Shown here piece after piece: positions 1 to 61,748 of a stretch of DNA of 64,000 nt (positions are counted from its first letter, which is position 1; every line of letters begins with the position of its first letter). Origin of the DNA: Octopus sinensis (Eukaryota); assembly GCF_006345805.1 (NCBI RefSeq), contig NC_043009.1:49352001-49416000 (forward strand), read 5' to 3'. Position numbers and translations under genes: made by a program. Under the pieces are notes generated by a model. It ran no database searches and was not told the DNA's origin. It saw only the letters and a list, made by a program, of their open reading frames with translations.

Positions 1-248
1 TGCAATGCTTCTGTAACATGGAATGAAAAAGAAATAATAGTTATAGCTGAAAATCTGCAAACTGTTGATGAAAACACGAAAGGATAAAAAAAAAAGGAAC
101 TGAAATAATCTCAAAAAAAAAATTGAAGACTCAACATAAAACCACAAAAAGAAATAAAGAGTTACCATTTCTTCAAAAGAAGAATATTACCCCAACCTCA
201 GGAAAATAACAAACAAAATACACAGGGTGTAAAAAACTAAGGTTCACC

Positions 249-876
249 TGGCTGTATGGTAAGAAGTTTGCTTCTCAACCACATAGTTCCAGGTTCAGTC
301 CCACTGCGTGGCGCCTCAAGCAAATGTTTTCTACTATATATTTCTTTACTACCCGCAAGGGGCTAAACATAGAGGCGACAAACAAGGACAGACAAAGGGA
401 TTAAGTCGATTATATCGACCCAGTGCGAAACTGGTACTTTATTTATCGACCCCGAGAGGATGAAAGGCAAAGTTGACCCCGGCGGATTTTGAACTCAGAA
501 CGTAACAACAGATGAAATACCACTACGCATTTTGTTCGGCGCGCTAACGTTTCTGCCAGCTCGCCGCCTTTTCTACTATAGTCTTGGGCTGACCAAAGCC
601 TTTTGAGTGAATTTGGTAGATGGAAACTGAAAGAAGCTTGTCGTATATATTTATATGTATATGTATGTATGTATTTGTGTGTCTGTGTTTCCTCCCCACC
701 ACCATCGTTTGACAAACCGATGTTAGTGTGTTTATGTCCCCATAACTTGTCAGTTCGGCAAAAGAGACTGATAAAATAAGTACTAGGCTTACAAAGAATA
801 AGTCCTGGGGTCGATCTGTTCGACTAAGGGCTGTACTCCAGCATGGCCGCAGTCAAATGACTGAAACAAGTAAAAA
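249..876 (+). mobile_element. tRNA-headed SINE, family A (interrupted by nested SINE at 339-568)
   Basis: A-box-like TGGCTGTATGG and B-box-like GGTTCAGTCCC head, internal (TA/TG)n, 3' end ...CAGTCAAATGACTGAAACAAGTAAAA. The same sequence recurs more than 10 times in the window. Confidence 0.9.
339..568 (-). mobile_element. SINE family B, tail variant B1, nested in SINE A
   Basis: Head GGCGGCGAGCTGGCAGAAACGTTAG...GAGTTCAAA on the minus strand. Exact 12-bp TSD TTTTCTACTATA at 327-338 and 569-580. Confidence 0.92.
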
Positions 877-1130
877 CTACAAAAGGAATAGATTTTTCAA
901 AAATGAAACAAATTAAAGACAAAGTTATATCTTGTTTTTGAAACTTTCTGAAGAAATTAGAAACGACAAACAAAATGCTCAGATGAATATTTTTCCCAGC
1001 TTTACATCCTGAGTTCAAATTCTACTAAGGTCGATTTTACCATTTTTTGTTTCAGGGTTGATAAAATAAGCACCAGTCGAGTTCTCGGGGGAGGGGGGGT
1101 CAATGTGATCAACTGTTCACATCTGGTGAC

Positions 1131-1299
1131 TAACCAGGGTTCCGCAAGAAGTTACAAAGCTGCTAAAATCAGCAGTAATTTTTAATTCTCCTGTGCAGAT
1201 ATGTGTGCATAAGATTATTAAATTATTGCACTGGGGTTCCTTGAGCCAGTGGAATGTTTCCTTGAGGTTCCGCTCCAGCAAAAAGTTTGAAAAGCACTG
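1131..1299. mobile_element. hAT-type MITE fragment
   Basis: Ends in GTTTGAAAAGCACTG, similar to the right TIR of the 19259-19995 element, and shares GGGTTCC-rich subterminal sequence. Left TIR not seen. Confidence 0.45.
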
Positions 1300-1369
1300 T
1301 TTTAATGTAACACAATTATAAAAAATAGTTTCAGATTTAAGCTCAACGATTTAAGGTCAATTACCATCA

Positions 1370-1815
1370 TCACTGCTGCCGCCGCCACCACCACCACCAC
1401 CACCACTATCACTACCACTACTACAATTACTACTACTACTACTACTACTGCTACAATTACTACTATTACTACTACTACTAGTATTACTACTACTGCCATC
1501 ATCACAAACACCTCCTCCACCACAACCACTACTATGATCATCACCACCACACCACCACACAAACCCCCACCACCACTATCTCTACCACTACTACAATTAC
1601 TACTACTACTACTACTGCTACAATTACTACTATTACTACTACTACTACTACTGCTACAATTACTACTATTACTACTACTACTAGTATTACTACTACTGCC
1701 ACCATCACAACCACTACTATGATCATCACCACCACACAAACCACTACCACCACCACTACTACTACCTTACTACTACCACTACTGCTGCTGCTGCTACTAC
1801 TACTACTACTACTTT
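1370..1815. repeat. Compound (ACT/ACC)n trinucleotide repeat with ~180-bp internal duplication
   Basis: Direct inspection; the block ...CTAGTATTACTACTACTGCCAYCATCACAA... occurs twice. Confidence 0.9.
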
Positions 1816-2219
1816 GCCTACGCATAAATTTTAAGGGGTTAAAATCGATTTAATTGTCCCCAATATGTACTATATTTAAGCTGCATCCCTGATTCAGTAT
1901 TAAATCTTGGTACAAAATTTTTGTCCCTTTGTGTTCAACCTTCATATAAGTTTTGCTCCATATTTAAGTCAAATCCTAAAAAGTCACCGAAACCTGCATG
2001 AAGATATGTGCTTTGAACAGAGAGGATGCTATTATGGAGTGTGTGCCAAAAGTGGTTTTCAAGATTTTGAATGGGAAATATTTTGATTCAAGATGATGAT
2101 TCTACCAGCTCACTGCATTTATCATAATGATAATGGTTCCATATTTTGGTACAAGGCCAGCAACTCTAATTATATGACTAGGATGATTGCAGATATTCCC
2201 CCCCAAAAAAGCCAAATCA

Positions 2220-2830
2220 CATACTGGAAACCATTTCTATGCAGTTACATCAGCAGACTTGATGTTTGGGCCTCACATCAAAGGATTTTTCATCTACAAT
2301 TCATTTCAGAAATATGAAGAAAACAAACCTTTTTTTTTTTTTTGAAGATAATGGTGAAAGGTGACAAAAAAAAAACTGATTGTCTATGACAATATGAAGT
2401 GAAAAGAACCATCACAAACAACTCTTAAGCAGGACTCATCCAAAGATTATTCTTTTAATTTGGTATGATTGAGAGGGCGTTTTCTTTTACAAGTGCCTTC
2501 CCATGGTCAGGATCATCATTTTGTCCTGGTGGACAAGTTAAACAGTGATCCACCAGAAGTATCCAGCACTTGCTAATCATAAGGGTATTGTCTTTTGTCA
2601 CAACACTGCCAGACAACACACTTCTTCATGCACACCAGGATTAGGTGGGAAGTTGTACTCCACAGTCCATTTTTACCTGACCTTGCACCTTCAAATGTCT
2701 ACCTTTTGGTCTCTTTCAAAGCCCTTTGAATGGATAGACCTTCAACTCTGAAGTGGATATATAATTTCAGCTGGAAGATTTTTTTTGCCAGTTAAGACAG
2801 GTAATTCTTTGAGCAGGGAATAACAGACAG
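2220..2830 (+). pseudogene. Decayed mariner (DD34D-type) transposase
   Basis: Frameshifted fragments YISRLDVWASH, FLKIMVKGDKK..IVYDN, HPKIILLIWYD*EGV, QKYPALANHKGIVFCHNTARQHTS and WEVVLHSPFLPDLAPSNVYL match the mariner motifs VxRLDxWVPH, TGDEKW..YDN, HDNARPH and HPPYSPDLAPSDY. Confidence 0.85.
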
Positions 2831-2836
2831 TTCTAT

Positions 2837-3050
2837 GAGGAATTATGTACATTATTTACATTTGACAGATATTTGTCCTCATCTTGTTTCGGCTGGGGGA
2901 AATTTCAAACCTAGCTTCTCATTCCTAAGGTATTTTTCATTGTTGTTGTTGATGTTGTTAATGTTGTTGTTGTTGGTGGTGGTGGTCCACTGCTTGGAAT
3001 TGAACTTGGAATCTTGGGGTTAGTAGCCCATGCTCTTAACCATTATGCCA
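2837..3050 (-). mobile_element. SINE family E: tRNA-like head + microsatellite + Penelope/hammerhead-like tail (internally deleted)
   Basis: Minus strand reads GGCATAATGGTTAAGAGC..CTACTAA..AGTTCAATTCC, then (CAA)n, then GAAAAATACCTTAGGAATGAGAA...CAGCCGAAACAAGATGAGGACAAATAT. Same order as the copy at 13818-14550. Confidence 0.7.
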
Positions 3051-3105
3051 TATTTTGATGAAAATTTTCAAAAAACTTTCCAAAGTTTTGGTGGAAATTT
3101 TCAGA

Positions 3106-3524
3106 AAAGTCAATTACATTGTCTATTGGAAAACTCATTATAAAGTCACTCATTAAGTTGAAATATGGAAAGTAAAAAACAAAACAAAAAAAAAACACTG
3201 AGAAATGCAAAAACAAAAAGAATAATTTAATTCAGCACATTAACAGTTTTCTTTCAAATTTTGAAAAATTTGGTATTTTTACAAAGTTATAGCTGAATGA
3301 TGTCATTGATGGTGAACTGGTGGGAAATTTGATATTAATAAAAGCTCAAGCATGAAACTGGCTGTGTAGGAAGAAGTTTGCTTCTCAACCCCATGGTTCT
3401 TAGTTCAGTCCTTCTGCATGGCAAGCATCAACAAACATCTACTATTGCCCTGGGTGAGCTTAAAGTTTTGTGTGCATGGATGTGGTAGATGGAAGCTAAA
3501 ATAAGCCGTCACATATTAATCTCC
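3106..3524 (+). repeat. Left arm of long inverted repeat (partner 9546-9995)
   Basis: Reverse complement of 9546-9995 over unique AT-rich DNA plus a degenerate SINE-A 5' fragment; roughly >90% identical by eye. Confidence 0.95.
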
Positions 3525-6500
3525 ACTGGCTTCCATATTTTGTGATTTTGGCACTGCTGTTCTTGTGATTTTTCGAAAATTTTCCCCAAAAATTTTTCAA
3601 AGATTTTCACCGAAAATTTTCCCCGAAAATTTTACCCAAATATTTTTCGAAAATTTTACCCAAAAATTTTTCGAAAATTTTTGCCGAAAATTTTCCCCAA
3701 AAATTTTTCCAAAATTTTCCCCAAAAATTTTTCCAAAATTTTTACCGAAAATTTTAACAAAAAATATTTCGAAAATCACAAAGTATGGAAGGCCAGCGGT
3801 GCCAAAATCACATTTTTCGAAAATTTTACCCAAAAATTTTTCAAAAATTTTTCACCGAAAATTTTCCCCAAAAATTTTTCCAAAATTTTCCCCAAAATTT
3901 TTCCAAAATTTTCACCGAAAATTTTACCCAAAAATTTTTCGAAAATTTTTGCCGAAAATTTTCCCAAAAAAATTTTTCCAAAATTTTCACCGAAAATTTT
4001 ACCCAAAAATTTTTCGAAAATTTTCCCCAAAAATTTTTCCAAAATTTTCACCGAAAATTTTCCCCAAAAATTTTTCGAAGATTTTCACTGAAAGTTTTCC
4101 TTAAAAATTTTCACCGAAAATTTTCCCCAAAGAAAATATTTTTCGAAAATTTTACCCAAAAATTTTTGAAAATTTTCCCCAAAAATTTTTCCAAAATTTT
4201 CCCCAAAAATTTTTCCAAAATTTTTACCGAAAATTTTCCCCAAAAATTTTTCAAAGATTTTCACCGAAAATTTTCCCCGAAAATTTTACCCAAATATTTT
4301 TCGAAAATTTTACCCAAAAATTTTTCGAAAATTTTCCCAAAAATTTTTCCAAAATTTTCCCCAAAAATTTTTCCAAAATTTTTACCGAAAATTTTAACAA
4401 AAAATATTTCGAAAATCACAAAGTATGGAAGGCCAGCGGTGCCAAAATCACATTTTTCGAAAATTTTACCCAAAAATTTTCCGAAAATTTTCCCCAAATA
4501 TTTTTCCAAAATTTTCACCGAAAATTTTACCCAAAAATTTTTCGAAAATTTTTGCCGAAAATTTCCCAAAAAAATTTTTCGAAAATTTTCACCGGAAATT
4601 TTACCCGAAAATTTATCGAAAATTTTCTCCAAAACTTTTTCCAAAATTTTCACCGAAAATTTTCCCCAAAAATTTTTCGAAGATTTTCACTGAAAGTTTT
4701 CCTTAAAAATTTTCACCGAAAATTTTCCCCAAAGAAAATATTTTTCGAAAATTTTACCCAAAAATTTTTGAAAATTTTCCCAAAAATTTTTCCAAAATTT
4801 TCCCCAAAAATTTTTCCAAAATTTTTACCGAAAATTTCCCCAAAAATTTTTCACCGAAAATTTTTGCCGAAAATTTCCCCCAAAGTATGGAAAACCAGCA
4901 GTGCCAAAATCACAAACTATGGAAGGCCAGGGGTGCCAAAATCACAAAGTATGGAAGGCCAGCGGTGCCAAAATCACAAAGTATGGAAGGCCAGCGGTGC
5001 CAAAATCACAAAGTATGGAAGGCCAGCGGGGCCAAAATCACAAAGTATGGAAGGCCAGCGGGGCCAAAATCACAAAGTATGGAAGGCCAGCGGGGCCAAA
5101 ATCACAAAGTATGGAAGGCCAGCGGTGCCAAAATCACAAAGTATGGAAGGCCAGCGGTGCCAAAATCACAAAGTATGGAAGGCCAGCGGGGCCAAAATCA
5201 CAAAGTATGGAAGGCCAGCGGTGCAAAAAACACAAAGTATAGAAAACCAGCGGTGCCAAAATCACAAAGTATGGAAACCATTCTTCGAAAATTTTTACCA
5301 AAAATTTTAGGAAAATTTTACTCAAAAACTTTTCCAAAATTTGTGATTTTGGCCCCGCTGGCCTTCCATACTTTGTGATTTTGGCCCCGCTGGCCTTCCA
5401 TACTTTGTGATTTTGGCACCGCTGGCCTTCCATACTTTGTGATTTTGGCACCGCTGGCCTTCCATACTTTGTGATTTTGGCCCCGCTGGCTTTCCATACT
5501 TTGTGATTTGGCACCCCTGGCCTTCCACACTTTGTGATTTTGGCACCGCTGGTTTTACATACTTTGGGGGAAATTTTCGGCAAAAATTTTTTGAGAATTT
5601 TCACCGAAAATTTCCCAAAAAAATTTTTCGAAAATTTTCACCGAAAATTTTACCCGAAAATTTATCGAAAATTTTCCCAAAAATTTTTCGAAAATTTTCC
5701 CCAAGAATTTTTCGAAAATTTTCCCCAAATATTTTTCCAAAATTTTCCACAAATATTTTTCCAAAGTTTTGACCGATAATTTTACCCAAAATTTTCCGAA
5801 AATTTTACCCAAAAAGTTTTCAAAAATTTTTGCCGAAAACTTTTCCAAAATTTTACCTAACAATTTTTCGAAAATTTTCCTTCAAAAATTTTTCGAAAAT
5901 TTTCCCAAAAGTTTTTTCGAAAATTTTCACCGAAATTTTACCAAAAAATTTATCGAAAATTTTACCCAATTATTTTTCGAAAACTTTCCCCAAGAATTTT
6001 TCGAAAATTTTCCAAAATTTTTCGAAAACTCTCCCCAAATATTTTTCCAAAATTTTCACCGAAAATTTTACTCAAAAATTTTTAGAAAATTTTAAAAAAG
6101 TTTTTCAAAAATTTTCCCCAAAAAATTTTCGAAAATTTTGTAGATTTTATTCCAAAATTTTTCGAAAATTTTCCCAAAAATTTATCGAAAATTTTCTCCA
6201 AAACTTTTTCCAAAATTTTCACCGAAAATTTTCCCCAAAAATTATTCGAAGATTTTCACTGAAAGTTTTCCTTAAAATTTTCACCGGAAATTTTCCCCAA
6301 AGAAAATATTTTTCGAAAATTTTACCCAAAAATTTTTGAAAATTTTTCCAAAAAATTTTTCCAAAATTTTCCAAAAATTTTTCCAAAATTTTCCGAAAAT
6401 TTTAACAAAAAATTTTTCGAAAATTTTCTAGAAAAATTTCCCCAAAAATTTTTCACCGAAAATTTTTGCCGAAAATTCCCCCAAAGTATGGAAAACCAGC

Positions 6501-9500
6501 GGTGCCAAAATCACAAAGTATGGAAGCCAGGGGTGCCAAAATCACAAAGTATGGAAGGCCAGCGGTGCCAAAATAACAAAGTATGGAAGGCCAGCGGTGC
6601 CAAAATCACAAAGTATGGAAGGCCAGCGGGGCCAAAATCACAAAGTATGGAAGGCCAGCGGTGCCAAAATCACAAAGTATGGAAGGCCAGCGGTGCCAAA
6701 ATCACAAAGTATGGAAGGCCAGCGTTGCCAAAATCACAAAGTATGGAAGGCCAGCGGTGCAAAAAACACAAAGTATAGAAAACCAGCGGTGCCAAAATCA
6801 CAAAGTATGGAAACCATTTTTCGAAAATTTTTACCAAAAATTTTAGGAAAATTTTACTCAAAAATTTTTCCAAAATTTGTGATTTTGGCCCCGCTGGCCT
6901 TCCATACTTTGTGATTTTGGCCCCGCTGGCCTTCCATACTTTGTGATTTTGGCACCGCTGGCCTTCCATACTTTGTGATTTTGGCACCGCTGGCCTTCCA
7001 TACTTTGTGATTTTGGCCCCGCTGGCTTTCCATACTTTGTGATTTGGCACCCCTGGCCTTCCACACTTTGTGATTTTGGCACCGCTGGTTTTACATACTT
7101 TGGGGGAAATTTTCGGCAAAAATTTTTGAGAATTTTCACCGAAAATTTCCCAAAAAAATTTTTCGAAAATTTTCACCGAAAATTTTACCCGAAAATTTAT
7201 CGAAAATTTTCCCCAAAAATTTTTCGAAAATTTTCCCCAAGAATTTTTCGAAAATTTTCCCCAAATATTTTTCCAAAATTTTCCACAAATATTTTTCCAA
7301 AGTTTTGACCGATAATTTTACCCCAAAATTTTCCGAAAATTTTACCCAAAAAGTTTTCAAAAATTTTTGCCGAAAACTTTTCCAAAATTTTACCTAACAA
7401 TTTTTCGAAAATTTTCCTTCAAAAATTTTTCGAAAATTTTCCCAAAAGTTTTTCGAAAATTTTCACCGAAATTTTACCCAAAAATTTATCGAAAATTTTA
7501 CCCAATTATTTTTCGAAAACTTTCCCCAAGAATTTTTCGAAAATTTTCCCAAAAATTTTTCGAAAACTCTCCCCAAATATTTTTCCAAAATTTTCACCGA
7601 AAATTTTACTCAAAAATTTTTAGAAAATTTTAACAAAAGTTTTTCAAAAATTTTCCCCAAAAAATTTCCGAAAATTTTGTAGATTTTATTCCAAAATTTT
7701 TCGAAAATTTTCCCAAAAATTTATCGAAAATTTTCTCCAAAACTTTTTCCAAAATTTTCACCGAAAATTTTCCCCAAAAATTATTCGAAGATTTTCACTG
7801 AAAGTTTTCCTTAAAAATTTTCACCGGAAATTTTCCCCAAAGAAAATATTTTTCGAAAATTTTACCCAAAAATTTTTGAAAATTTTCCCAAAAATTTTTC
7901 CAAAATTTTTCCCAAAAATTTTTCCAAAATTTTTACCGAAAATTTTAACAAAAAATTTTTCGAAAATTTTCTAGAAAAATTTCCCCAAAAATTTTTCACC
8001 GAAAATTTTTGCCGAAAATTTCCCCCAAAGTATGGAAAACCAGCGGTGCCAAAATCACAAAGTATGGAAGGCCAGGGGTGCCAAAATCACAAAGTATGGA
8101 AGGCCAGCGGTGCCAAAATCACAAAGTATGGAAGGCCAGCGGTGCCAAAATCACAAAGTATGGAAGGCCAGCGGTGCCAAAATCACAAAGTATGGAAGGC
8201 CAGCGGTGCCAAAATCACAAAGTATGGAAGGCCAGCGGTGCCAAAATCACAAAGTATGGAAGGCCAGCGGGGCCAAAATCACAAAGTATGGAAGGCCAGC
8301 GGTGCAAAAAACACAAAGTATAGAAAACCAGCGGTGCCAAAATCACAAAGTATGGAAACCATTTTTCGAAAATTTTACCAAAAATTATAGGAAAATTTTA
8401 CTCAAAAATTTTTCCAAAATTTGTGATTTTGGCCCCGCTGGCCTTCCATACTTTGTGATTTTGGCCCCGCTGGCCTTCCATACTTTGTGATTTTGGCACC
8501 GCTGGCCTTCCATACTTTGTGATTTTGGCACCGCTGGCTTTCCATACTTTGTGATTTTGGCCCCGCTGGCTTTCCATACTTTGTGATTTGGCACCCCTGG
8601 CCTTCCACACTTTGTGATTTTGGCACCGCTGGTTTTACATACTTTGGGGGAAATTTTCGGCAAAAATTTTTTGAGAATTTTCACCGAAAATTTCCCAAAA
8701 AGATTTTTCGAAAATTTTCACCGAAAATTTTACCCGAAAATTTATCGAAAATTTTCCCCAAAAATTTTTCGAAAATTTTCCCCAAGAATTTTTCGAAAAT
8801 TTTCCCCAAATATTTTTCCAAAATTTTCCACAAATATTTTTCCAAAGTTTTGACCGATAATTTTACCCCAAAATTTTCCGAAAATTTTACCCAAAAAGTT
8901 TTCGAAAATTTTTGCCGAAAACTTTTCGAAAATTTTACCTAACAATTTTTCGAAAATTTTCCCCAAAAATTTTTCGAAAATTTTCCCAAAAATTTTTCGA
9001 AAATTTTCACCGAAATTTTACCCAAAAATTTATCGAAAATTTTACCCAATTATTTTTCGAAAACTTTCCCCAAGAATTTTTCGAAAATTTTCCCAAAAAT
9101 TTTTCGAAAATTCTCCCCAAATATTTTTCCAAAATTTTCACCGAAAATTTTACTCAAAAATTTTTCGAAAATTTTCCCAAAAGTTTTTCGAAAATTTTCC
9201 CCAAAAAATTTCCGAACATTTTGTAGATTTTATTCCAAAATTTTTCGAAAATTTTCCCAAAAATTTTTCGATAATTTTCTCAAAAGTTTTTAGAAAATTT
9301 TCCCCAAATATTTTTCCAAAATTTTCAGCGAAAATTTTCACCGAAAATTTTACCCAAAAATTTTCCGAAAATTTTCACCGAAATTTTCACCAAAATTTTC
9401 CCCAAAAATTTTTCGAAAATTTTCACAAAAAATTTTTCGAAAATTTTACCCAAAAAATTTTTCGAAAATTTTCACCGAAAAATTGCCGGTAATTACCGGA

Positions 9501-9540
9501 AATTGCTGGAAATTGCTGGAAATTGCCGCAGATTTTAATT
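3525..9540. repeat. Hierarchical satellite array: ~12/24-bp CGAAAATTTT/CCCCAAAAATTTTT units, 32-bp unit arrays in both orientations, ~0.6-kb and ~1.55-kb higher-order repeats
   Basis: 32-bp unit CCAAAATCACAAAGTATGGAAGGCCAGCGGTG; GTATGG cores at 4885, 4917...5269 (13), 6486...6805 (11) and 8030...8350 (11). Inverted arrays of ~7 units at ~5336-5570, 6875-7105 and 8418-8650. Confidence 0.97.
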
Positions 9541-9545
9541 GGATT

Positions 9546-9995
9546 GGAGAGATTAATATGAGACGGGCTTCTTTTAGTTTCCATCTACCACATCCATGCA
9601 CACAAAACTTTATGCTCACCCAGGGCAATAGTAGATGTTTGTTGATACTTGCCATGCAGAAGGACTGAACTTAGATCCATGGGGTTGAGAAGCAAAATTC
9701 TTCCTACACAGCCAGTTTCATGCTTGAGCTTTTATTAATATAAAATTTTATTAATATCAAATTTCTAACCATCAGTATCATCATTATCACCATCAATGAC
9801 ATCATTCAGCTATAACTTTGTAAAAATACCAAATTTTTCAAAATTTCAAAGAAAACTGTTAATGTGCTGAATTAAATGATTCTTTTTTGTTTTTGCATTT
9901 CTCAGTGTTTTTTTTTGTTTGGTTTTTACTTTCCATATTTCGACTTAATGAGTGACTTTTTAATGAGTTTTCCAATAGATAAGGTAATTGACTTT
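9546..9995 (-). repeat. Right arm of long inverted repeat (partner 3106-3524)
   Basis: Reverse complement match to the left arm, with two small arm-specific insertions near 9741-9795. Confidence 0.95.
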
Positions 9996-10099
9996 ATCAT
10001 CATTAGTGTTGGAAGTCAATAGTTCTATTACATAGCATAGTGGCATTTATAAGATTGCTGCCACACATAATTGGTTCACTTACCAAAATGTTGATGGTT

Positions 10100-10134
10100 G
10101 TACTAAAAACTGCTGACCATGAATATATATATAC

Positions 10135-10231
<97 letters not shown>

Positions 10232-10315
10232 TATATACACACGCAAAATGTATATATATATATATAATATATATATATATATAATATATATATATGCATA
10301 TAACTATATATATAC
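10100..10315. repeat. (TA)n microsatellite
   Basis: Direct inspection. Confidence 0.95.
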
Positions 10316-10319
10316 ACTC

Positions 10320-10645
10320 ACAGTATGGCTTGCTGTGCTTACCTTGGATCGCGGGGTGACCTGCAGCACTTGAGGAGACCTGTTGATATCAACATCAAAA
10401 TAAAAATCAAATGGAAAATGTAGTTTTGATGCCCATGCCAGTGGCACGTAAAAAGCACCGTCCGAACATGGCCAATACCAGCACCGCCTTGACTGGCATC
10501 CATGCTGGTGACACATAAAAAGCACCCACTACACTGCCAGATCAGACTGGAGCCTGGTGCAGCCTCCTGGCTTCCCAGACCCTAGTTGAACCATCCAACC
10601 CATGCTAGCATGGAAAACGGACGTTAAACAATGATTATGATGATA
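10320..10645 (+). mobile_element. RTE-LINE 3' UTR fragment with (GAT)n-like tail
   Basis: Same sequence as the UTR following the RTE ORF end at 25114-25660 (…CCAACCCATGCTAGCATGGAAAACGGACGTTAAAC). Confidence 0.8.
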
Positions 10646-10654
10646 TGTGTGTGT

Positions 10655-10960
10655 ATCATCATCGTTTAGTGTCCACCTTCCATGTTGGCATGTGTTGGGC
10701 AATTGACAGGAGCTGGCCAGGCAGAAGATTACACTAGACTACTGTGACTGTTTTGGCATGTTTTTCTAATACCTAATACCAACCACTTTGCAAAGTGGAC
10801 AGAGTTCCTTTTACATGGCACCAGCACAGGGAAGGTCAGTTATGGGTATGATTTTTACATCTGGATATCCTTCCAGATGTCAACCACTTCACAGTGTTGA
10901 CTGGATGCTTTTTTATATGACACCAACATCAACAGGGTCACCAAGCAACTTACAAGTCAA
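10655..10960 (-). mobile_element. Degenerate element with RTE-like tail, tail-to-tail with 10320-10645
   Basis: CATCATCGTTTAGTGTCCACCTTCCATGTTGGCATG is the reverse complement of the RTE tail. Related copies at ~15935-16150 and ~37690-37920. Confidence 0.6.
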
Positions 10961-11005
10961 GGTATGTATGTATATATTGATATGGAGGTCAGTTGAGAAA
11001 AAAAG

Positions 11006-11900
11006 TGCTATGACCTAGTTTCGTGGTTTGGTGCCAGCTGGACTAGGGAGACAGGTTATTTTGTCTTTGTTCTGTCATTTTTGTAGGGAAATTAATGAGT
11101 TTGGAAGAGACATCTGACCCTATCCGGTCAAGCAAAGTTTAAGGAAAAAAATTAAAATGCCACCCTTTAAAATGCGGGGAGCTGGGGGTTTGTTAGTCAG
11201 TTGGCGTGAGGGTCGATGCAGAGATGACAGTTGGCAGGAGGCGAGAAGAACAGGCAGAGAGTATTGAGGACATGTAAATCGAAAGGGAGATAACGGCGAG
11301 AAGGCTGGATTGATGTGGTAGGAGTTTGTAACTAGAAAATGTGCGGTAATGTTTGTTTGTTTTTTGTTGTTGACTTTTGATATGAAATGTAAAAGAAACG
11401 AGATTATGACGTAAACTGTAATCTGTTGTTAAAAGAAGAAAAAGAATTGTGTCAAAAACAGAGAACTGTGAATTGTGGAAAAGAGGAGGAAGAGAAAGAA
11501 AGAAGAAAAGAGAAAGACTTTAATTTAAACTATTTTTCGAACTCTGTATTACGTTGAACATTAATGTTTTGATTGTCTTCGGACTGTGTTGATTGTGCAT
11601 GCCTTTGATTGTTTTCTTTTTAATTCTGTATTTTCTTTAATATATCTGATATGTATTACGTTTTATTTGATGTTGTAACAAGTGTATAAACTGATGTTAA
11701 ACGTAAGCAACTGCCTTCCACCGTGTCTCTCTCTCTCTCTTCCTGTTGTTGTTGTTATCTCTGGTTACCGGTTTGAGTTCGCTGCCATCTCCACCACCGT
11801 TTTCGGTGTGGCGGATTCCCGTTTGACTGAGCCTGGTCATCGTCGTCGCTCGACTTAGTAGGGTCCCGGGTTCGAGTTGAGCGACGGCAGGTTCGTAACA
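11006..11900. mobile_element. Candidate solo LTR
   Basis: TG...CA termini with an imperfect inverted repeat (TGCTATGACC / GGTTCGTAACA), ~895 bp, CpG-richer than flanks. TSD poor (AAAAG/ATATG). Confidence 0.4.
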
Positions 11901-12190
11901 ATATGTATGTATGTACTATGTATGTATGTATGTATGTATGTATGCATGCATGCATGCATCTATGTATATATATATATGTGTGTGTATGTATGTATGCATG
12001 CACACACACACATGCTTATTTGCATTGATGGAGAACAGCTTTTTATTTTTTTTCGACATTTTGTCCTGAAAGCACAATTGTGATCTACTTATAACATTTT
12101 AAATGATTTATTTGTTTGTTGGTTATAATTTGTGTTTTGCTTTTTTACAGATATTTGTATTCTTCCTCAGATCATTCATCATCATCACCA

Positions 12191-12460
12191 TCATAGCTTG
12201 CACTGGGTACACCTTATGGAATTTCTTTTAACACCTTCTCTACATATTGTGCAGGGCCATTTCCCTGAAGGGATCTGTGATTTGTCTGTTTTATTACTTA
12301 ACAATACTTTGGTCTTTGATTCCATTCCATGCTTCCATACCTGAAAAATCTTCTCTAGTGATTCAGCAATAAGAACAAGGTCATGAGTATAGAGGAGCTC
12401 CCAAGGGCAGCCAGTCTTAAATTCCTCAGTTATAGCTTGGAGGACCATGATAAATAAACA
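12191..12460 (-). pseudogene. RTE-clade LINE reverse transcriptase fragment
   Basis: VLQAITEEFKTGCPWELLYTHDLVLIAES has a decayed YADD motif, followed by WPCTICREGVKRNSIRCTQC as seen in RTE-BovB-like ORFs. Confidence 0.85.
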
Positions 12461-12877
12461 TCATCATCATCATCATTGTTTAACGTCCGCCTTCCATGCT
12501 GGCATAATTTTTACATCCATAACCATCAACATTTCAAGACTTTCACACTTTCTTACCATGAATATGTGAAGTGTTATTAATGTAGCTAACATCCTCTTAT
12601 GTGGTGGGTAAATGTATGTCTTGGAGGTTTTATCACCAAATTTGTTTAAACATTAATCTTGGGTTTTGAAATTTGATCTATATCTCAACAATTTGTAAAT
12701 ACTTATGCATACACACACACACAAACATATACACATACACACACATATATATATATACATATAAACACACACATACATATATACACACTCATATATACAT
12801 ATGCACACACTCACACACACATATATATATGCATATGCACACACACTTATACACACACAATATATTCATATATATTG

Positions 12878-13058
12878 CCGGTGACATGTAAAAGGCACCC
12901 ACTATACTCATGGAGTGGTTGGCGCTAGGAAGGGCATCAAGCTGTAGAAACACTGCCAGATCAGTCTCGAGCCTAGTGTAGCCTCCTGGCTTCTCAGACT
13001 CCGGGCCAACCATCCAACCCATGCTAGCATGGAAAACAGACCACGATTATGATGATGA
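12878..13058 (+). mobile_element. 5'-truncated RTE-LINE 3' end
   Basis: Matches the shared RTE tail; (GAT)n end; sits in a (TA/CA)n tract. Confidence 0.8.
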
Positions 13059-13504
13059 CACACATACACATATATGCGTATTCATATACATATGAGATGA
13101 GGGCAAATATCCGTCAAATGTAAATAATGTAAATAATGTGCATAATTCCTCATCTCTTAAATATAGAACTACTTTTTTTAAATGTTGCAGCATATCAATA
13201 CAAAACTGTAACTAGCATTGATATTTTATCAACTTGTATTTCTACTGAGACATGGATTAAGAGTTGGAAATCTAAATCCACCATTTTGAATACAAGTAAT
13301 TATCTTTCATTCTGTCTTTAATGTAAATCGGATTGCTGGTTCCTTTTTTGCAAAAAAAAAAAGAAAAGAAAGAGAATTCTAAATAAAAATTAAGCAATTT
13401 TTAAATGATAAAAATTAGTTGTGCTCATTTAACGAACACTTTTAATTATTTTTCAAATTTTCTCCATAGTGTTGCTTTGGATGACAATTGTTCATAGATT
13501 CAAG

Positions 13505-13720
13505 GCAGAGAGAACTAACAAAATCATTAGCACACTGAGTAAGATGCTTAGCAGCATTTCCACCATCTTTATGTTCTTGGTTCAAATTCCACCGAGGTTG
13601 ACTTTGCACTTCATCCTTTCAGGGTTGATAAAATAAGGACCCATTGAACACTGTGTTTGATCTAATCAACTTATCCACTCCCTTGAAATTGCTGGCCTAG
13701 TGCTAAAATGTGGAACCAAT
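13505..13720 (+). mobile_element. Degenerate SINE family B (B2 tail)
   Basis: GGTTCAAATTCCACCGAGGTTGACTTTGCACTTCATCCTTTCAGGG core. Confidence 0.7.
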
Positions 13721-13817
13721 ATTTCATAGATTCAAAGTGATGACCTGGCAGAAATGTTACCATGCAGGACAAAAATGCTTAGCAGCATTTCTTCTGACTT
13801 TATATTCTACGGGCATA

Positions 13818-13881
13818 TGGCATACAGGTTAAGAGCACAGGCTACTAACACCAAGATTCTGAGTTCGATTCCAAGCAGTGA

Positions 13882-13915
<34 letters not shown>

Positions 13916-14383
13916 TGGTATAAAAAATGGGCTACAGCAAATATTCTGCTCAATACCACAAATTTCCTTGTCAGTTGTTTGACCTTTACCAGTTGAGCAT
14001 GTCCCTTAGTGGCTGATGATATGTGCATCTCTGACCATGAGCAGAAGTAGTGGGGGAGCATCATAGCCATGTGTTGAAAGGAATTCTTAGAGGTTTGGAT
14101 AATTCACCTATGGAAACATGGGTGGTTTGTTCAACATCCTTAAACAATCCTTATTTAAGGACCTTTTGAGTGGGATGGGCTACTCGACCGGAAGAAAATT
14201 CTAACTGGACCCCACCTGCAAGGTCATGCACTGTTTCTCTTGATATGAGATCACCATGTTGCATACATGTGGTTATGATGGTGTACCCTTATCAAACAGG
14301 TAGTCATGATGGGTATACTGGGCTTCATATATTTTACCCGAGTGTCACTTTGATGGCATGCACTACTCTCTCACTCAATAGTG

Positions 14384-14416
<33 letters not shown>

Positions 14417-14550
14417 TTGAAAAATACCTTAGGAATGAGAAGCCCGGTTTGAAATTTCCCCAAGACACCTGATGAAATGTTGCGTTAACAACAAACATTA
14501 TATTAACAAACAAACAAGGACAAATATCCATCAAATGTAAATAATGTTTA
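13818..14550 (+). mobile_element. SINE family E (tRNA head, (AAT)n, hammerhead-like tail) with ~470-bp insertion in its (AAT)n
   Basis: Head TGGCATACAGGTTAAGAGC..CTACTAA..GAGTTCGATTCC at 13818-13885; tail ATTGAAAAATACCTTAGG...ACACCTGATGAAATGTTGCGT...AAATGTAAATAATG at 14416-14550. Confidence 0.7.
13916..14385. mobile_element. Unclassified ~470-bp insertion flanked by (AAT)n on both sides
   Basis: Splits SINE E at its internal (AAT)n tract; no recognisable ORF or TIR. Confidence 0.45.
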
Positions 14551-14740
14551 TATTTTAAGTTCAAATGCCTCAGGGGTCGACCTTTACTTTCATCCTTTTG
14601 GAGATAATAAATAAAGTACCAGTTGAGCACTGGAGATGACGTAACCAATTTATCCACCACTCTTGAAAATACTGGCCTTGAAATCAGTTTTTCATAATTC
14701 TTGGATCTAAGAAAAGAAACTGAAATATTTAAAAATTAAA

Positions 14741-15067
14741 TTTTGTTTGTGGATTTGGTTTGCAAGATTCTTTATGTGAGTTTGTGTGTTGAAGCATATT
14801 CTGTTGTGTCTGGGGAGAATCATTTTCTTTTTGTGCCTTATGATTTAAGACACTCACGAGTAAAATTTCCACTTATTTCTTGTTTTTATTTTCCCTAAAA
14901 TTTTCGTTGCGTCTTGCAAATTTTTCAATAGTCTTGACTCTTGAAAAGGTTGCAAGACGCAACGAAAATTTTAGGAAAATAAAAATAAGAAATAAGTGGA
15001 AATTTTACCGGTGAGTGTGTTAAATTATAAGGCACAAAAAAAAAATGACTCTCCCCAGACACAACAA
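14741..15067. mobile_element. Palindromic (fold-back) non-autonomous element centred on AGTCTTGACT
   Basis: 14802-14929 is the reverse complement of 14940-15066. Second copy at 32015-32445. Confidence 0.8.
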
Positions 15068-16320
15068 ATTAAAAATTAAAATCAGATGGAAAAATCAAAC
15101 AAAAAGAAAAATGAAAAGACACAAACATAACCATGGGGGCTAAGAAGTTCATTTTTCAATCATGGTGTTCTTGGCACAATCCTACTGCATGGAGCACAGA
15201 GCAGGTGTCAAAAACAGTCATTGATAAATTGGCTTCAGTTTAGCATTAAAAGCCATTAGAATAATGTTTGCGATTGGTTGTGATGAGGTGGCACAGATAT
15301 AACAAGGATGATCCAACATCTCTGTTAACACTGACATAATTACATGAGGACACTTAAATTTCCTGCAAGCATTATTAATAACTTTTTCACTATCAATCCT
15401 TCATGACACACATTTGTTTATTTATTAGTTATCCTGAAAGCAAAAACACTCTCCTTACACTCAACTATAAAAATTTGAAGATGTGAATGTTTTAAAATAA
15501 ATCTAACACCATGTGCTAACACCCTTAAGATCTTCTCCCTCTGTGAAGAGCAAGTTAATACATAACTTACTTTCACAGTGGAGAATATAGTATCCCAGCA
15601 TTAAAAAAATGGTAAAAATCATAAATGCAGGCATACCACAACCTATGTTGTTTTTGAGCTACGTTTTTTTTTTTTTTTTTACTTTATATTGTTTTTATTT
15701 TTTAAGGAATTAACGAGAAAAATAAACATCGGCTGAAGCTGATGCATTTGACTATATGTTGGTCTCACCGAACATATTTGAAAAATTTAAAATTTAAAAT
15801 GTCACCTAAAAAGCTAGTACTGAAGTGAAAGCAAAATATATATGAAAAAGTACAAATTTGTTACTAAAACACATAAAAACTAATCAACATCATCATCATC
15901 ATCATCATTGTCGTCATTATCCTCACCGTCATCTTCATCATCTTCATCATCATAATTTAACACCCATTTCCATACTGGCATGGATTAGATGGTTTGTCAG
16001 GAGCTGGCAAGGCCAGGAGCCACACCCTGTTCCGCAGTCTGTTTTGGCCTAGTTTGAACAACTGGATACCCTTCCTGATGCCAATCACTTTACAGGGTAT
16101 ATTGGGTGTTTTTATGTGGATTCCCACAAGTGGTTTTTACATGGTCCCATCACTATTACTATTACTTATTACATTCCACTGCCACTCTTAGCAGCCCAAC
16201 AAACACACTCTGGCAGCAAACGACATGCATCTACCAACTGCTACAAAATTCAAACCAAGAAGGATGGATGGGATGGCCTTGAAGTTGATTTTAAACTAAC
16301 AGAGACAACACTTGAATATC

Positions 16321-32014: not shown

Positions 32015-32445
32015 ATATTCTGTTGTGTCTGGGGAGGGTAATTTTCTTTTTGTGCCTTATAACTTAACACGCTCACCGGTAAAATTTCCACTTATTTTTA
32101 TTTTCCTAAAATTTTCGTCGCGTCTTGCAACCTTTTCACTAGTCTTGACTACTGGAAACGTTGCAATATATATATACATATACTCACTCATATATACATA
32201 TACATATACACACACATAAAAGTCTTGACTATCGAAAAGGTTGCAAGATGCAACGAAAATTTTAGGAAAATAAAAATAAGAAATAAGTGGAAATTTTACC
32301 GGTGAGTGTGTTAAATTATAAGGCACAAAAAGAAAATGACTCTCCCCAGACGCAACAGAATATGCTTCAACACACGAACTCATATAAAGATTCTTGCAAA
32401 CCAAATCCAAAAACGAAATGTAAAATATATGAAGTCAGTTAAACC
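32015..32445. mobile_element. Palindromic fold-back element (second copy) with 70-bp central insert
   Basis: Arms as in 14741-15067; AGTCTTGACT at 32141-32150 and 32221-32230 brackets a TA/CA-rich insert. Confidence 0.8.
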
Positions 32446-38341: not shown

Positions 38342-39544
38342 GTAAGTTATTTGAGGACATACCTTTTTTGGGGTCATTGCTGTACTTTTTGCTAATACTG
38401 TATAATCTTTGCTTCAGAAAATAATAATGGCAGACCCTCAGCTTACTCAAGATATGAAGAGGCATGCTGTTATTGTGGTTATAAAGGCTGAGAAGAAATA
38501 TCTCGATTTTTACAAGCTATCAGATCTTTTTGTCTACAAAGTTTGTAAGGAACTGGAGACTGTAGATGGAAACGTGTCACCATTATCAAAGCATAAAGAG
38601 TATTCTAAATGCTCTGAAATCATCAGAATCCAGCAAGTTCAACAGACCGTTGATTACAATCCCAGAAAAATCCATGAGGTCAATTGCAAAAGATCTCCAT
38701 GTGTCTGAAGAAACAGTCAGAAATGTTGTCCACTAAGACATCAGATATAAGTCTTATATGATGAGAAAAAGTCAATTTGTTAGAAAAAGCAAAAGAAAAT
38801 CACTACATCAGATCTAAAAGGCTCTTAAACAAACTGAAAAATCCAGCAGAAGATTTGATTTGGTTTTTCTTAAACAAGAAAAACTTCGACCAAGATCAAA
38901 AAGTCAACAGAAGAAATGACAGATGGTTATGTGCAGATTCTTCTGAAGTTCCAAGTATTATGCATACAAAATTTCCTGCAACTATCATGGTTTTAGAGGT
39001 TGTCAGCAATGAAAGACATGTGATGTCTCCTGACTTCTTTCCACAAGGCTTTAGAGTTAACTCTGCCACCTACATTGAGGTCCTAGAAATAATTGTTAAG
39101 CCCTGGATAGACAGTGTATGCAATGGCAGGCCATGTGTGTTTCGGTAAGACTCTGCACTATCACACATGGCTCTAGTAACACAGGAATGGATGGCTGAAG
39201 ATTTTTATGATCACAACACCCCTAACATATGGCCTTTTAATTCCCCAGATCTCAATCCATTGGACTATTACATGTGGAGCGTTTTTGAGAGAGAGGTCAA
39301 TGAACACGCCCATAGCACCAAAGATTCTATGAAAGCTGCCATAGTCAGTGTAAAATGAACCAGGACCACTTGATTTGAGCATGTACATGATTTGGAGTTG
39401 TTGAAGCTGAAGGTAGCTTTATTGAATAACATTATAGAAAAGAAGGTTTATTTTTATCCTCAGCATTTTTTGATAAATAAAGTCATCTGTTATTAAATAT
39501 CTGTTTTTTTTTTATAAATATAAATCTGTCCTCAAATATCTTAC

Positions 39545-59469: not shown

Positions 59470-59730
59470 TGTATGTGTGTGTGTGTGGTGTGTGTGTGTG
59501 TGTGTGTTTTCCATAGCTTTTCTTCAATATTACAACTGATAAACTGTCAAAGAATTAATTATCGATGATAGTAATATATATTAATAATAATAATAATAAT
59601 AATGATTTCAAATTTTGGCACAAGGCCAGCAATTTTGGGAAGGGGATAAGTTGATTGCATCGACCCCAGTACTCAACTGGTACTTATCTTATCGACCCCG
59701 AAAGGATGAAAGGCAAAGTTGACCTCAGTG

Positions 59731-59773
<43 letters not shown>

Positions 59774-60195
59774 TTCTTTTATTGCCACATGGGCGACGGA
59801 TGAAGACATTACACGGTCAAATACTCATTATAATAATAATAATAATAATAATTATATCAATAATAATAATAATAATAATAATGATAATTATAATTATAAT
59901 AATAATAATAATAATGATAATTATAGTAATAATAATAATGAAAGTAATACAATAAGTGCATTTCATTGCATGGAAAGAGTGTTTTCTTTTCTGTTTGTGT
60001 TGACTGCATGTCAGTCTGTCTGTGTGAGTGTGGTGCTGGTTGTTGGCCAAGTTTCTTTCATCTTGGTACAAATATTCCTGCAGCAGTTGTCACAGATTTG
60101 GGGGGAAAAAATAAAGGAGACAGAAGAAAGCTAGGTTCCTCTATGGGTAGAGTATGGAAGGAAAGGGGGAAAATATATGTGTGTGTGTATGCATT

Positions 60196-60278
<83 letters not shown>

Positions 60279-61224
60279 TGTGTGTGTGTGTGTGTATATA
60301 TATATACATATATATATATACATATATACATATATATATACACATACATATATATATATGCATAATGCACATGCACTTATATATATATATATATACACAA
60401 ACACATACACTTACATGCATATATATATATATACATGCACACACACGTATACACAAACATGAGCATATATATATGTATGTATACGTGAACATGTGTGTGC
60501 ATATGTATATATGTGTACATATGTATGTGTGTATATATACATATATATGGCATATACATACGTGTATAAGCTTAAATGTGTGTGTATATACACACACATA
60601 CACACACACATAATGAATATATAATTAAAAAAAACTCTCTCACCCCTTCACTGAAAAAAATAAAAACATTATTATCATGGTCATCGTCGTAATTTGTTAA
60701 TTGTCTACACCTTCCCAATCACTGCAGCTCTGTAGGGCCTTTTCTGTGAGTGTAGGGGGGAGTGGGAAAAGGTATAATTTCTTTTTTTAATTAATTAAGT
60801 GATTAAATTTTCATATATATATATTTATTATTTTTTTTTTGTTTTGTTTTTAAAGAGAAGCACCTTCACTTCATTTTTATAAATGTTTCATATTTTACAT
60901 TCACATATGTGCATTTAATTATGTTTTGTGTTACGTACGCTTTTGTGTGTATGCAGGTATGCATGTATGTGTGTGTGTGTGGTGTGTGTGTGTGTGTGTG
61001 TTTTCCATAGCTTTTCTTCAATATTACAACTGATAAACTGTCAAAGAATTAATTATCGATGATAGTAATATATATTAATAATAATAATAATAATAATGAT
61101 TTCAAATTTTGGCACAAGGCCAGCAATTTTGGGAAGGGGATAAGTTGATTGCATCGACCCCAGTACTCAACTGGTACTTATCTTATCGACCCCGAAAGGA
61201 TGAAAGGCAAAGTTGACCTCAGTG

Positions 61225-61261
<37 letters not shown>

Positions 61262-61683
61262 TTCTTTTATTGCCACATGGGCGACGGATGAAGACATTAC
61301 ACGGTCAAATACTCATTATAATAATAATAATAAATAATAATTATATCAATAATAATAATAATAATAATGATAATTATAATTATAATAGTAATAATAATAA
61401 TGATAATTATAGTAATAATAATAATGAAAGTAATACAATAAGTGCATTTCATTGCATGGAAAGAGTGTTTTCTTTTCTGTTTGTGTTGACTGCATGTCAG
61501 TCTGTCTGTGTGAGTGTGGTGCTGGTTGTTGGCCAAGTTTCTTTCATCTTGGTACAAATATTCCTGCAGCAGTTGTCACAGATTTGGGGGGAAAAAATAA
61601 AGGAGACAGAAGAAAGCTAGGTTCCTCTATGGGTAGAGTATGGAAGGAAAGGGGGGAAAATATATGTGTGTGTATGCATTTGC

Positions 61684-61748
<65 letters not shown>

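What the first reader, a model, noticed from the sequence alone, without database searches (positions are those of the whole stretch)
3053..9995. Satellite block bracketed by ~430-bp inverted copies of host-like DNA (fold-back or template-switch scar)
Seen: 3106-3524 is the reverse complement of 9546-9995, including unique AT-rich DNA and a decayed SINE fragment, with arm-specific indels. No TSD is visible. The right arm runs on into ordinary DNA, while the left arm has satellite-like sequence on both sides. Inference: the left arm is a copy of neighbouring DNA captured in inverted orientation when the satellite-bearing segment arrived (template switching, hairpin-capped break repair or rolling-circle capture). 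Alternatively the whole is a Foldback-type element with long TIRs. The arms could pair into a 6-kb loop in ssDNA or RNA.
Basis: partly seen in the sequence, partly recalled or inferred. Interest (0 to 1): 0.72.

Follow-up and report, generated by a model that had tools for sequence, protein, structure and literature searches.

The report
Inverted host-DNA copy flanking octopus satellite
A 6.5-kb block of complex satellite DNA in an octopus genome is bracketed by two inverted, 95%-identical copies of about 430 bp of ordinary host DNA; it is most likely an old fold-back DNA-repair scar rather than a mobile element, real but ordinary.

Summary
Positions 3106-3523 are the reverse complement of 9549-9995: 397 matches, 20 mismatches, 5 indel events, BLAST E = 7e-152. 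Each arm holds about 250 bp of AT-rich DNA that is single-copy in the window, plus the first ~165 bp of an octopus SINE.

In the SINE part the arms share 48 derived differences from the SINE consensus and have only 5 and 3 private ones. They are therefore copies of each other, not independent insertions.

No TSD exists. Junction microhomology is at most 3 nt. The 53 bp outside the left arm (3053-3105) is satellite-like; nothing outside the right arm is.

The block is a ~1.54-kb higher-order repeat: inverted arrays of a 32-bp unit plus an AAAATTTTCCCC-type array. It has about 3.8 copies, two of them 99.2% identical, so it kept amplifying after the arms formed.

Best reading (0.55): a break at the left edge of an existing satellite was repaired by snap-back or template-switch synthesis. 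This copied the DNA beyond the far end of the satellite in inverted orientation, and end joining sealed it.

A Foldback/Tetris-like transposon is disfavoured but not excluded, because no octopus genome could be searched for further copies. Interest is low to moderate.

The parts
2842..3053 (-). Context only: an unrelated tRNA-derived SINE (head, then (CAA)n, then tail). Its 5' end abuts the satellite-like patch.
   Evidence: Read. Pieces match other copies at 13815-13883, 14418-14464 and 13095-13137. ARAGORN and Rfam call no tRNA here.
3053..3105 (.). 53-bp patch of A-type satellite sequence outside the left arm. It is either the old left edge of the satellite or a second short templated insertion.
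   Evidence: It holds the only GAAAATTTTC outside the block. Its Smith-Waterman score is 52 against the block and at most 29 against the rest of the window. The best match is to the A-array in inverted orientation.
3106..3523 (+). Left arm, the inferred copy. It is the reverse complement of 9549-9995. About 3106-3354 is AT-rich DNA that is single-copy in the window; about 3355-3523 is the 5' ~165 bp of the octopus SINE.
3524..3567 (-). About 1.5 degenerate 32-bp units in reverse orientation. This is the inferred break site and the start of the truncated higher-order unit H1.
3568..4880 (+). A-array 1: AAAATTTTCCCC-type repeat with 12/13/24/37-bp periods, C-rich on the + strand. It carries two solo consensus 32-mers at 3779-3810 and 4419-4450, and an internal ~600-640-bp duplication.
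4881..5276 (+). Forward array of the 32-bp unit, 12.4 copies (CAAAGTATGGAAGGCCAGCGGTGCCAAAATCA).
5332..6867 (+). Higher-order unit H2: reverse 32-mer array x7.4 (5332-5566), A-array (5571-6477), forward 32-mer array x10.4 (6482-6812), then a 55-bp A-type spacer.
6868..8411 (+). Higher-order unit H3, with the same layout. It is 99.2% identical to H2 (1521 matches, 12 mismatches).
8412..9484 (+). Higher-order unit H4: reverse 32-mer array x7.4 (8412-8646) and A-array (8651-9484), with no forward array. About 93% identical to H2 and H3.
9480..9545 (+). Right inner junction: a 20-bp repeat x2.5 (AAATTGCCGGAAATTACCGG, 9480-9528) and then ~17 bp present only on this side. The last 2-4 bp are ambiguous microhomology with the left junction.
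9546..9995 (-). Right arm, the inferred donor or original. The SINE 5' fragment lies at about 9546-9718 on the minus strand; AT-rich DNA at 9719-9995 runs on into non-satellite DNA.
5030..5570 (.). One of three internal palindromes, each made of a forward and a reverse 32-mer array around a 55-bp spacer. The other two are centred near 6840 and 8385.
   Evidence: Inverted pairs are 95-97% complementary. As single-stranded DNA it folds into one long hairpin, -275 kcal/mol, z = -38 against shuffles.
9988..10019 (.). Short inverted repeat: ATTGACTT (the last bases of the right arm) and AAGTCAAT 17 nt further on. It may be where copying stalled or exited, or it may be chance.
   Evidence: It was found post hoc; about 0.2 such 8-mer matches were expected in that scan.

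Best explanation
This is a repair scar, not a functional unit. An AT-rich complex satellite already lay next to an old, 3'-truncated SINE.

Inferred sequence of events:
1. A double-strand break, or a stalled fork, occurred at the left edge of the satellite, within or next to a reverse 32-bp unit.
2. After resection, the 3' end of the bottom strand folded back on its own strand (or switched to the sister strand). It annealed through 1-3 nt of microhomology just beyond the far (right) end of the satellite, inside the decayed (TA)n of the SINE.
3. It copied about 450 nt outwards through the SINE 5' half and the neighbouring unique DNA.
4. The new end was released. It possibly copied a further ~50 nt of A-type satellite, which would be the patch 3053-3105. 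It was then joined to the other broken end with at most 1 nt of homology.

The product is an inverted copy of the right-flank DNA on the far side of the satellite, with the inner ends facing the loop and no target-site duplication.

The satellite later kept changing between the arms by unequal exchange, including a very recent duplication of one 1.54-kb unit.

Shown: the inverted duplication, its content, its boundaries, the absence of a TSD, the asymmetric satellite patch, and the relative ages. Inferred: the direction (right to left), the break position, and the snap-back mechanism.
For: 1. The arms are copies of each other, made late in the SINE's life. In the SINE part there are 48 shared derived differences from the SINE consensus, against 5 and 3 private ones.

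2. The geometry is what snap-back priming from a break at 3105/3524 predicts. The inverted copy lies directly at the break, its inner end is next to the loop, and its outer end points away.

3. The junctions look like end joining or microhomology-mediated repair.
   - J2, left arm: AATCTC--CA|CTGGCTTCC (32-mer).
   - J2, right arm, reverse complement: AATCTCTCCA|ATCC. This gives 1-3 nt of overlap.
   - J1: CAGA|AAAG against GATGAT|AAAG, at most 1 nt.
   - No TSD of 4-12 bp is present.

4. Polarity: satellite-type DNA lies outside the left arm only. The right arm continues into non-satellite DNA.

5. The arms are host-like. They contain a flank-to-SINE 5' junction and are single-copy in the window.

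6. Timing: arms 95.2% identical, H2/H3 99.2%, H4 against H2/H3 93%.

7. The locus carries inverted symmetry at several scales: AAAATTTT cores, and three 200-330-bp 32-mer palindromes that fold at z = -38. Such sequence could favour breakage and intrastrand pairing (inference).
Against: 1. Only one locus could be studied. No octopus genome could be searched, so the copy number of the arms and the state of the orthologous site are unknown.

2. The polarity rests on a 53-bp low-complexity patch of ambiguous orientation. The mirror-image scenario (left arm original, right arm the copy) has the same geometry.

3. The idea that removing the left arm restores one continuous satellite unit is only weakly supported. 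The patch matches the higher-order-repeat centre at 37-41, against 44-52 elsewhere in the A-arrays.

4. Snap-back across a loop of several kilobases needs long resection, unless the satellite was much shorter at the time.

5. It is unexplained why copying began only ~60 bp beyond the last A-array repeat.

6. With 5% divergence, microhomology of 1-3 nt cannot be scored reliably.
Confidence: 0.55

Rival explanations
1. The whole 3106-9995 segment is a non-autonomous Foldback/Tetris-like DNA transposon. The ~430-bp arms would be its TIR flanking domains and the tandem repeats its interior, and it would have arrived here by transposition.
For: The layout of long inverted termini enclosing tandem repeats resembles Tetris. 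Tetris has a non-repetitive TIR flanking domain of up to 866 bp, then tandem repeats, then a middle domain, and it seeded a satellite (PMC4079207). 32-mer arrays occur in both orientations inside the block.
Against: No TSD is present, whereas Tetris has 8-10 bp. The arms are host-like, made of unique DNA plus a SINE with an intact 5' insertion junction. A SINE present in both TIRs would itself require an inverted duplication of host DNA. Inverted symmetry ends at the inner ends of the arms: reverse 32-mers on the left, a 20-mer array on the right. Satellite-like DNA lies outside the left end only. There is no second copy of the arm in the window or in 47 kb of two other octopus genomes, which is a tiny sample.
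Confidence: 0.12
2. The inverted duplication came first and the satellite second. The two arms formed as a near-palindrome with a short spacer, for example by fold-back at the hairpin-prone (TA)n of the SINE. The satellite then seeded and expanded inside the fragile spacer.
For: Both arms end inside the SINE's (TA)n. The satellite fills the spacer. At least part of the amplification post-dates the arms (H2/H3 99.2% against arms 95.2%). Palindrome centres are known fragile sites (general knowledge).
Against: The A-type patch outside the left arm is not explained if the satellite arose only inside the spacer. H1 and H4 differ from H2/H3 by 7-14%, which is more than the arms differ from each other, although low-complexity arrays align poorly and evolve fast.
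Confidence: 0.15
3. Mirror-image polarity. The left arm is the original host DNA, and the right arm was copied from it during repair of a break at the right edge of the satellite.
For: The geometry and both junctions are symmetric, so the same snap-back logic works from the other side.
Against: It needs an extra event to place satellite-type DNA on the outer side of the original arm. The right arm's outer flank shows no sign of being a break site in repetitive DNA.
Confidence: 0.1
4. Assembly artefact: a chimeric fold-back read or an inverted join of haplotigs.
For: The satellite is a hard region to assemble. H2 and H3 are 99.2% identical, so the copy number within the block is uncertain.
Against: The arms differ by 4.8% and by five indels, so they are not two strands of one molecule. 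Homology ends sharply at both ends instead of running on into the flanks as an inverted haplotig join would. All A-arrays share one orientation, so the block is not a palindromic artefact. There are no N gaps.
Confidence: 0.06

Closest known systems
Fold-back / snap-back templated inverted duplication (intrastrand template switching; FoSTeS/MMBIR-type repair).
   Same: An inverted copy separated from its template by a single-copy spacer. Junctions have 0-3 nt of microhomology. There is no TSD, and possibly a second short templated piece.
   Different: Classical fold-back inversions duplicate everything distal to the break and give large palindromic chromosome ends. Here only ~450 bp was copied before the end was rejoined. 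The spacer is a 4.5-6-kb satellite, longer than most described snap-back loops.
Tetris / Foldback (FB) transposons of Drosophila (PMC4079207)
   Same: Long inverted termini whose outer part is non-repetitive, with tandem repeats inside. Both show a link between such a structure and growth of a satellite array.
   Different: Tetris has 8-10-bp TSDs, several genomic copies, and tandem repeats that are part of both TIRs in mirror symmetry. Here there is no TSD, only one copy is known, the arms are host DNA with a SINE junction, and the repeats next to the two arms differ.
Mollusc satellites embedded in mobile elements, as in oyster satellitome studies. PMC8268682 and PMC5139131 were listed; only titles and abstracts were seen.
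   Same: Short to medium satellite arrays scattered in euchromatin of a mollusc, next to interspersed repeats.
   Different: Those arrays sit inside recurrent element-specific flanks. Here the flanks are a locus-specific inverted duplication, and recurrence could not be tested.
Higher-order-repeat satellites with inverted sub-arrays
   Same: A 1.54-kb higher-order unit amplified by unequal exchange, with 0.8-14% divergence between units.
   Different: Each unit combines two unrelated repeat types. It also holds a 200-330-bp perfect-type palindrome of 32-bp units.

Membership tests
Foldback/Tetris-like TIR transposon | Target-site duplication (8-10 bp in Tetris; 9 bp in FB by my recollection) | tested here: not met
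   No direct repeat of 4-12 bp flanks the arms within +/-20 bp of the homology ends. The only 8-mer found lies inside the arm rather than flanking it. The TSD size for Tetris is from PMC4079207.
Foldback/Tetris-like TIR transposon | Long terminal inverted repeats | tested here: met
   Arms of 418 and 447 bp with 95.2% substitution identity.
Foldback/Tetris-like TIR transposon | Tandem sub-repeats form part of both TIRs in mirror symmetry | tested here: not met
   The left arm is followed by ~1.5 reverse 32-mers and a C-rich A-array. The right arm is preceded by a C-rich A-array and a 20-mer array. No inverted similarity exists inside the arms.
Foldback/Tetris-like TIR transposon | Several dispersed genomic copies with the same termini | not testable with these tools
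   No octopus genome was searchable. There are no other copies in the 64-kb window, none in 47 kb from O. bimaculoides and O. sinensis, and none in the metagenome scans.
Fold-back / template-switch repair scar | The inverted copy of nearby DNA lies at the inferred break, with inner ends facing a single-copy spacer | tested here: met
   The strand geometry is worked through in the full report.
Fold-back / template-switch repair scar | Junctions with blunt ends or a few nucleotides of microhomology, and no TSD | tested here: met
   J2 has 1-3 nt and J1 at most 1 nt. No TSD. Precision is limited by the 5% divergence.
Fold-back / template-switch repair scar | Donor and copy can be told apart: an ancestral empty site exists | not testable with these tools
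   This needs the orthologous locus in related octopus species or population long reads. No exon was found in the window to anchor a look-up.
Independent insertions of one dispersed repeat | The arms relate to each other only through a common consensus, each with its own flank | tested here: not met
   There are 48 shared derived differences against 5 and 3 private ones in the SINE part. The arms also share the ~250 bp of flanking DNA and the same SINE 5' junction.
Helitron / Helentron-associated satellite carrier | No TIRs; 5'-TC and 3'-CTRR ends with a subterminal hairpin; insertion between A and T | tested here: not met
   The structure is bounded by long inverted repeats, which Helitrons lack. 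The terminal motifs were not searched in detail.

The most novel reading that the evidence does not exclude
The locus could be a founding or rare copy of a cephalopod Foldback/Tetris-like composite element, whose inverted arms were recruited from host DNA and which carries and spreads a two-component satellite. Alternatively, long inverted repeats in octopus genomes could act as cradles, in which the loop between the arms is driven to amplify tandem repeats.
Probability: 0.1. Interest if true: 0.5.

Novelty: new member of a known kind. Interest (0 to 1): 0.25.

Why it matters
If the reading is right, this is a clean, dated natural example of a kilobase-loop snap-back or template-switch repair event in a cephalopod germ line. 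It also shows a satellite that kept amplifying inside the loop of an inverted repeat. That is of modest interest for how satellites and their surroundings are reshaped in the repeat-rich octopus genome. The arms could also mediate inversion of the block. It opens no new question by itself. Its value would rise only if a genome-wide search showed that many satellite loci carry inverted copies of their own flanks, or that the arms belong to a mobile family.

Tried and rejected
1. I translated the stop-free 32-mer array (163 aa) to find other copies through predicted proteins. There were no hits.

2. Exact scans of JGI metagenome contigs with the 32-mer and with a 47-nt arm segment found nothing.

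3. Rfam and tRNA scans of 1-16000 found nothing.

4. I looked for host exons in the window, to anchor a look-up of the orthologous locus. I found only transposon fragments: mariner at 38.4-39.4 kb and a retroelement fragment at 12194-12460.

5. I fetched two octopus loci through a mariner homologue: L001 from O. bimaculoides and L002 from O. sinensis. They carry the same SINE family but no arm and no satellite. They served only to identify the organism.

6. TSD search: negative.

7. Hidden homology between the right flank and the left junction region, which would indicate a third degenerate arm or a circular permutation: not above shuffles, score 20 against a mean of 18.3, with 142 of 500 shuffles at least as high.

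8. The idea that patch plus post-arm sequence rebuilds one higher-order-repeat centre: the alignment does run across the junction. However, the patch matches ordinary A-array sequence better, and best in the inverted orientation. I do not rely on it.

9. A whole-block palindrome from a large inverted duplication is rejected. All A-arrays are C-rich on the + strand.

10. Derivation of the 32-mer from the SINE 3' half: I compared them by eye only. They share a 7-mer, which is not convincing.

Full report
**Organism and context**

The window is eukaryotic, AT-rich and full of interspersed repeats and microsatellites. About 37% of it is repeated within the window itself.

A SINE family with a central (TA/TG)n occurs many times in the window. 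It is also present at 80-88% identity in loci fetched from Octopus bimaculoides (GCA_001194135.2) and O. sinensis (GCA_006345805.1). A mariner transposase fragment at 38.4-39.4 kb has its only species-named close hits in those two species. The window is therefore from an octopus genome.

I found no host exon in it. Rfam and ARAGORN report nothing in 1-16000.

Positions 3106-3523 are the reverse complement of 9549-9995, at 89.1% over 449 columns and E = 7e-152. Counting substitutions only, there are 397 matches and 20 mismatches, which is 95.2% identity. There are five indel events covering 33 columns. The two largest are a 10-bp and a 19-bp insertion in the right arm. The 19-bp one is a local tandem duplication (TRF 9730-9764).

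Homology ends sharply on all four sides. This is the longest inverted pair outside the satellite, and the only one whose arms are otherwise single-copy in the window.

**What the arms are**

Each arm has two parts:
- about 250 bp of AT-rich DNA with no other copy in the window;
- the first ~165 bp of the octopus SINE, with an intact SINE 5' end.

The inverted homology stops 12-16 bp into the SINE's central (TA)n. I aligned the SINE part with ten other copies. The two arms share 48 derived differences from the consensus and have only 5 (left) and 3 (right) private ones.

So the arms are copies of each other, made when the SINE was already old. They include a flank-to-SINE insertion junction, which marks them as ordinary host DNA.

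**What lies between the arms**

The block is not a simple satellite. It is a higher-order repeat of about 1.54 kb. Each unit contains, in order:
- a reverse array of a 32-bp unit (7.4 copies);
- about 900 bp of an AAAATTTTCCCC-type array with 12/13/24/37-bp periods, always C-rich on the + strand;
- a forward array of the same 32-bp unit (10-12 copies);
- a 55-bp A-type spacer.

The four units are:

| Unit | Coordinates | Notes |
|---|---|---|
| H1 | 3524-5331 | Truncated to ~1.5 reverse units. Its longer A-array holds two solo consensus 32-mers and an internal 600-640-bp duplication. |
| H2 | 5332-6867 | Complete |
| H3 | 6868-8411 | Complete |
| H4 | 8412-9545 | No forward array; ends in a 20-mer x2.5 |

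Pairwise identities are 99.2% for H2 against H3, about 93% for H4 against either, and about 86% for H1 against H2 or H3.

The 32-mer occurs 51 times, all inside the block. Each forward/reverse array pair is a palindrome that folds as single-stranded DNA into one long hairpin, at -275 kcal/mol and z = -38.

The 32-mer arrays have no stop codon on the strand on which the unit reads CAAAGTATGG, but their translation has no homologue among 5.8 billion proteins. There is no reason to think they are coding.

**Junctions and asymmetry**

No direct repeat of 4-12 bp flanks the arms.

- Outer junction, left side: ...TTTTCAGA|AAAGTCAATTAC.
- Outer junction, right side, reverse complement: ...GATGAT|AAAGTCAATTAC. 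The overlap is at most 1 nt.
- Inner junction, left side: ...AATCTC--CA|CTGGCTTCCATA, running into a reverse 32-mer.
- Inner junction, right side, reverse complement...AATCTCTCCA|ATCCAATT. Here 1-3 nt could belong to either partner.

The 53 bp outside the left arm (3053-3105) is A-type satellite. It contains the only GAAAATTTTC found outside the block, against 59 inside. It scores 52 against the block, while nothing else in the window exceeds 29. The flank of the right arm has no such sequence and no homology to the left junction.

**Mechanism (inferred)**

Suppose a break at 3105/3524.

1. The right-hand fragment keeps a bottom-strand 3' overhang ending ...GGAAGCCAGTGG.
2. If resection exposes the strand as far as the right arm, this end can fold back. 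It can pair through TGG/CCA with the same strand at ...CTCTCCAATCC..., the inner end of the right arm.
3. Extension then produces AGAGATTAATATGAG... and continues to ...GTAATTGACTTT.
4. On the top strand this reads as the observed left arm, placed directly at the break, with its SINE end facing the satellite.
5. Release and end joining to the left fragment complete the structure without a TSD.

The patch may be the original left edge of the satellite. Because it matches the A-array best in inverted orientation, it may instead be a second ~50-nt templated piece, as happens in serial template switching.

An 8-bp inverted repeat (ATTGACTT 9988-9995 and AAGTCAAT 10012-10019) sits exactly where copying stopped. 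It was found post hoc and may be chance.

Replication-fork template switching would give the same product.

**Timing**

The arms differ by 4.8%. H2 and H3 differ by 0.8%, so at least one 1.54-kb unit was added after the arms formed. The loop was therefore at most 4.5 kb at the time of the event. It may have been much shorter if the other unit divergences are inflated by slippage.

**Rivals**

- *Foldback/Tetris-like transposon.* It shares the general layout (PMC4079207) but fails on TSD and on mirror symmetry of the sub-repeats. It would also need host DNA with a SINE junction in both termini. It is not excluded, because copy number could not be tested.
- *Palindrome first, satellite later.* This explains why both arms end in the (TA)n, but not the satellite patch outside the left arm.
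- *Reversed polarity.* It is geometrically equivalent and needs one extra event.
- *Misassembly.* It is unlikely given the 4.8% divergence, the arm-specific indels, the sharp homology ends and the uniform A-array orientation.
- *One large inverted duplication of the whole block.* It is rejected for the same orientation reason.

**Limits**

None of the available collections allowed a nucleotide search of an octopus genome. Two metagenome scans found nothing. The only octopus DNA I reached was 47 kb around unrelated genes.

**Verdict**

The inverted duplication bracketing a complex satellite is real and well defined. It is best explained as an old fold-back or template-switch repair scar into a pre-existing satellite that later kept expanding. 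It is a new instance of a known kind of event, of low to moderate interest.

Noticed in passing
window 14736-15069 and 32015-32423: Two copies of a palindromic MITE-like element with TIRs of about 150 bp, 85-95% identical between copies. The second copy has a (TATACA)n-type insert at its centre. Both contain AAAATTTTC motifs but are otherwise unrelated to the satellite.
   Followed up: partly
window 59586-60620 and 61080-62080: A tandem segmental duplication with a period of about 1.49 kb. It contains a SINE fragment, (AAT)n/(ATA)n, (AT)n and a 44-bp repeat. The same ORFs recur in both copies.
   Followed up: no
window 38406-39355 (+): A degraded mariner/Tc1-type transposase broken into several frames. 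Its best named relatives are uncharacterised proteins of O. bimaculoides and O. sinensis.
   Followed up: partly
window 12194-12460 (-): An 89-aa stop-free stretch that looks, by eye only, like the C-terminal part of a retroelement polyprotein (motif ...WPCTICREGVKRNSIRCTQCKL). It was not searched.
   Followed up: no
window 248-875: A nested SINE. One copy of the (TA/TG)n-containing SINE is interrupted at about 335-561 by a second, unrelated SINE in reverse orientation.
   Followed up: no
window 1411-1813: A long impure (ACT)n microsatellite of about 131 copies with strong C-over-G skew.
   Followed up: no
window 3568-9484: The A-array unit AAAATTTT(C)n recurs every 12-13 bp. That is close to, but longer than, one helical turn, so the arrays may be intrinsically curved or writhed DNA. 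This was not computed.
   Followed up: no
window 9988-10019: The last 8 bp of the right arm (ATTGACTT) and AAGTCAAT 17 nt downstream form a small hairpin-capable inverted repeat exactly at the end of the duplicated segment.
   Followed up: partly
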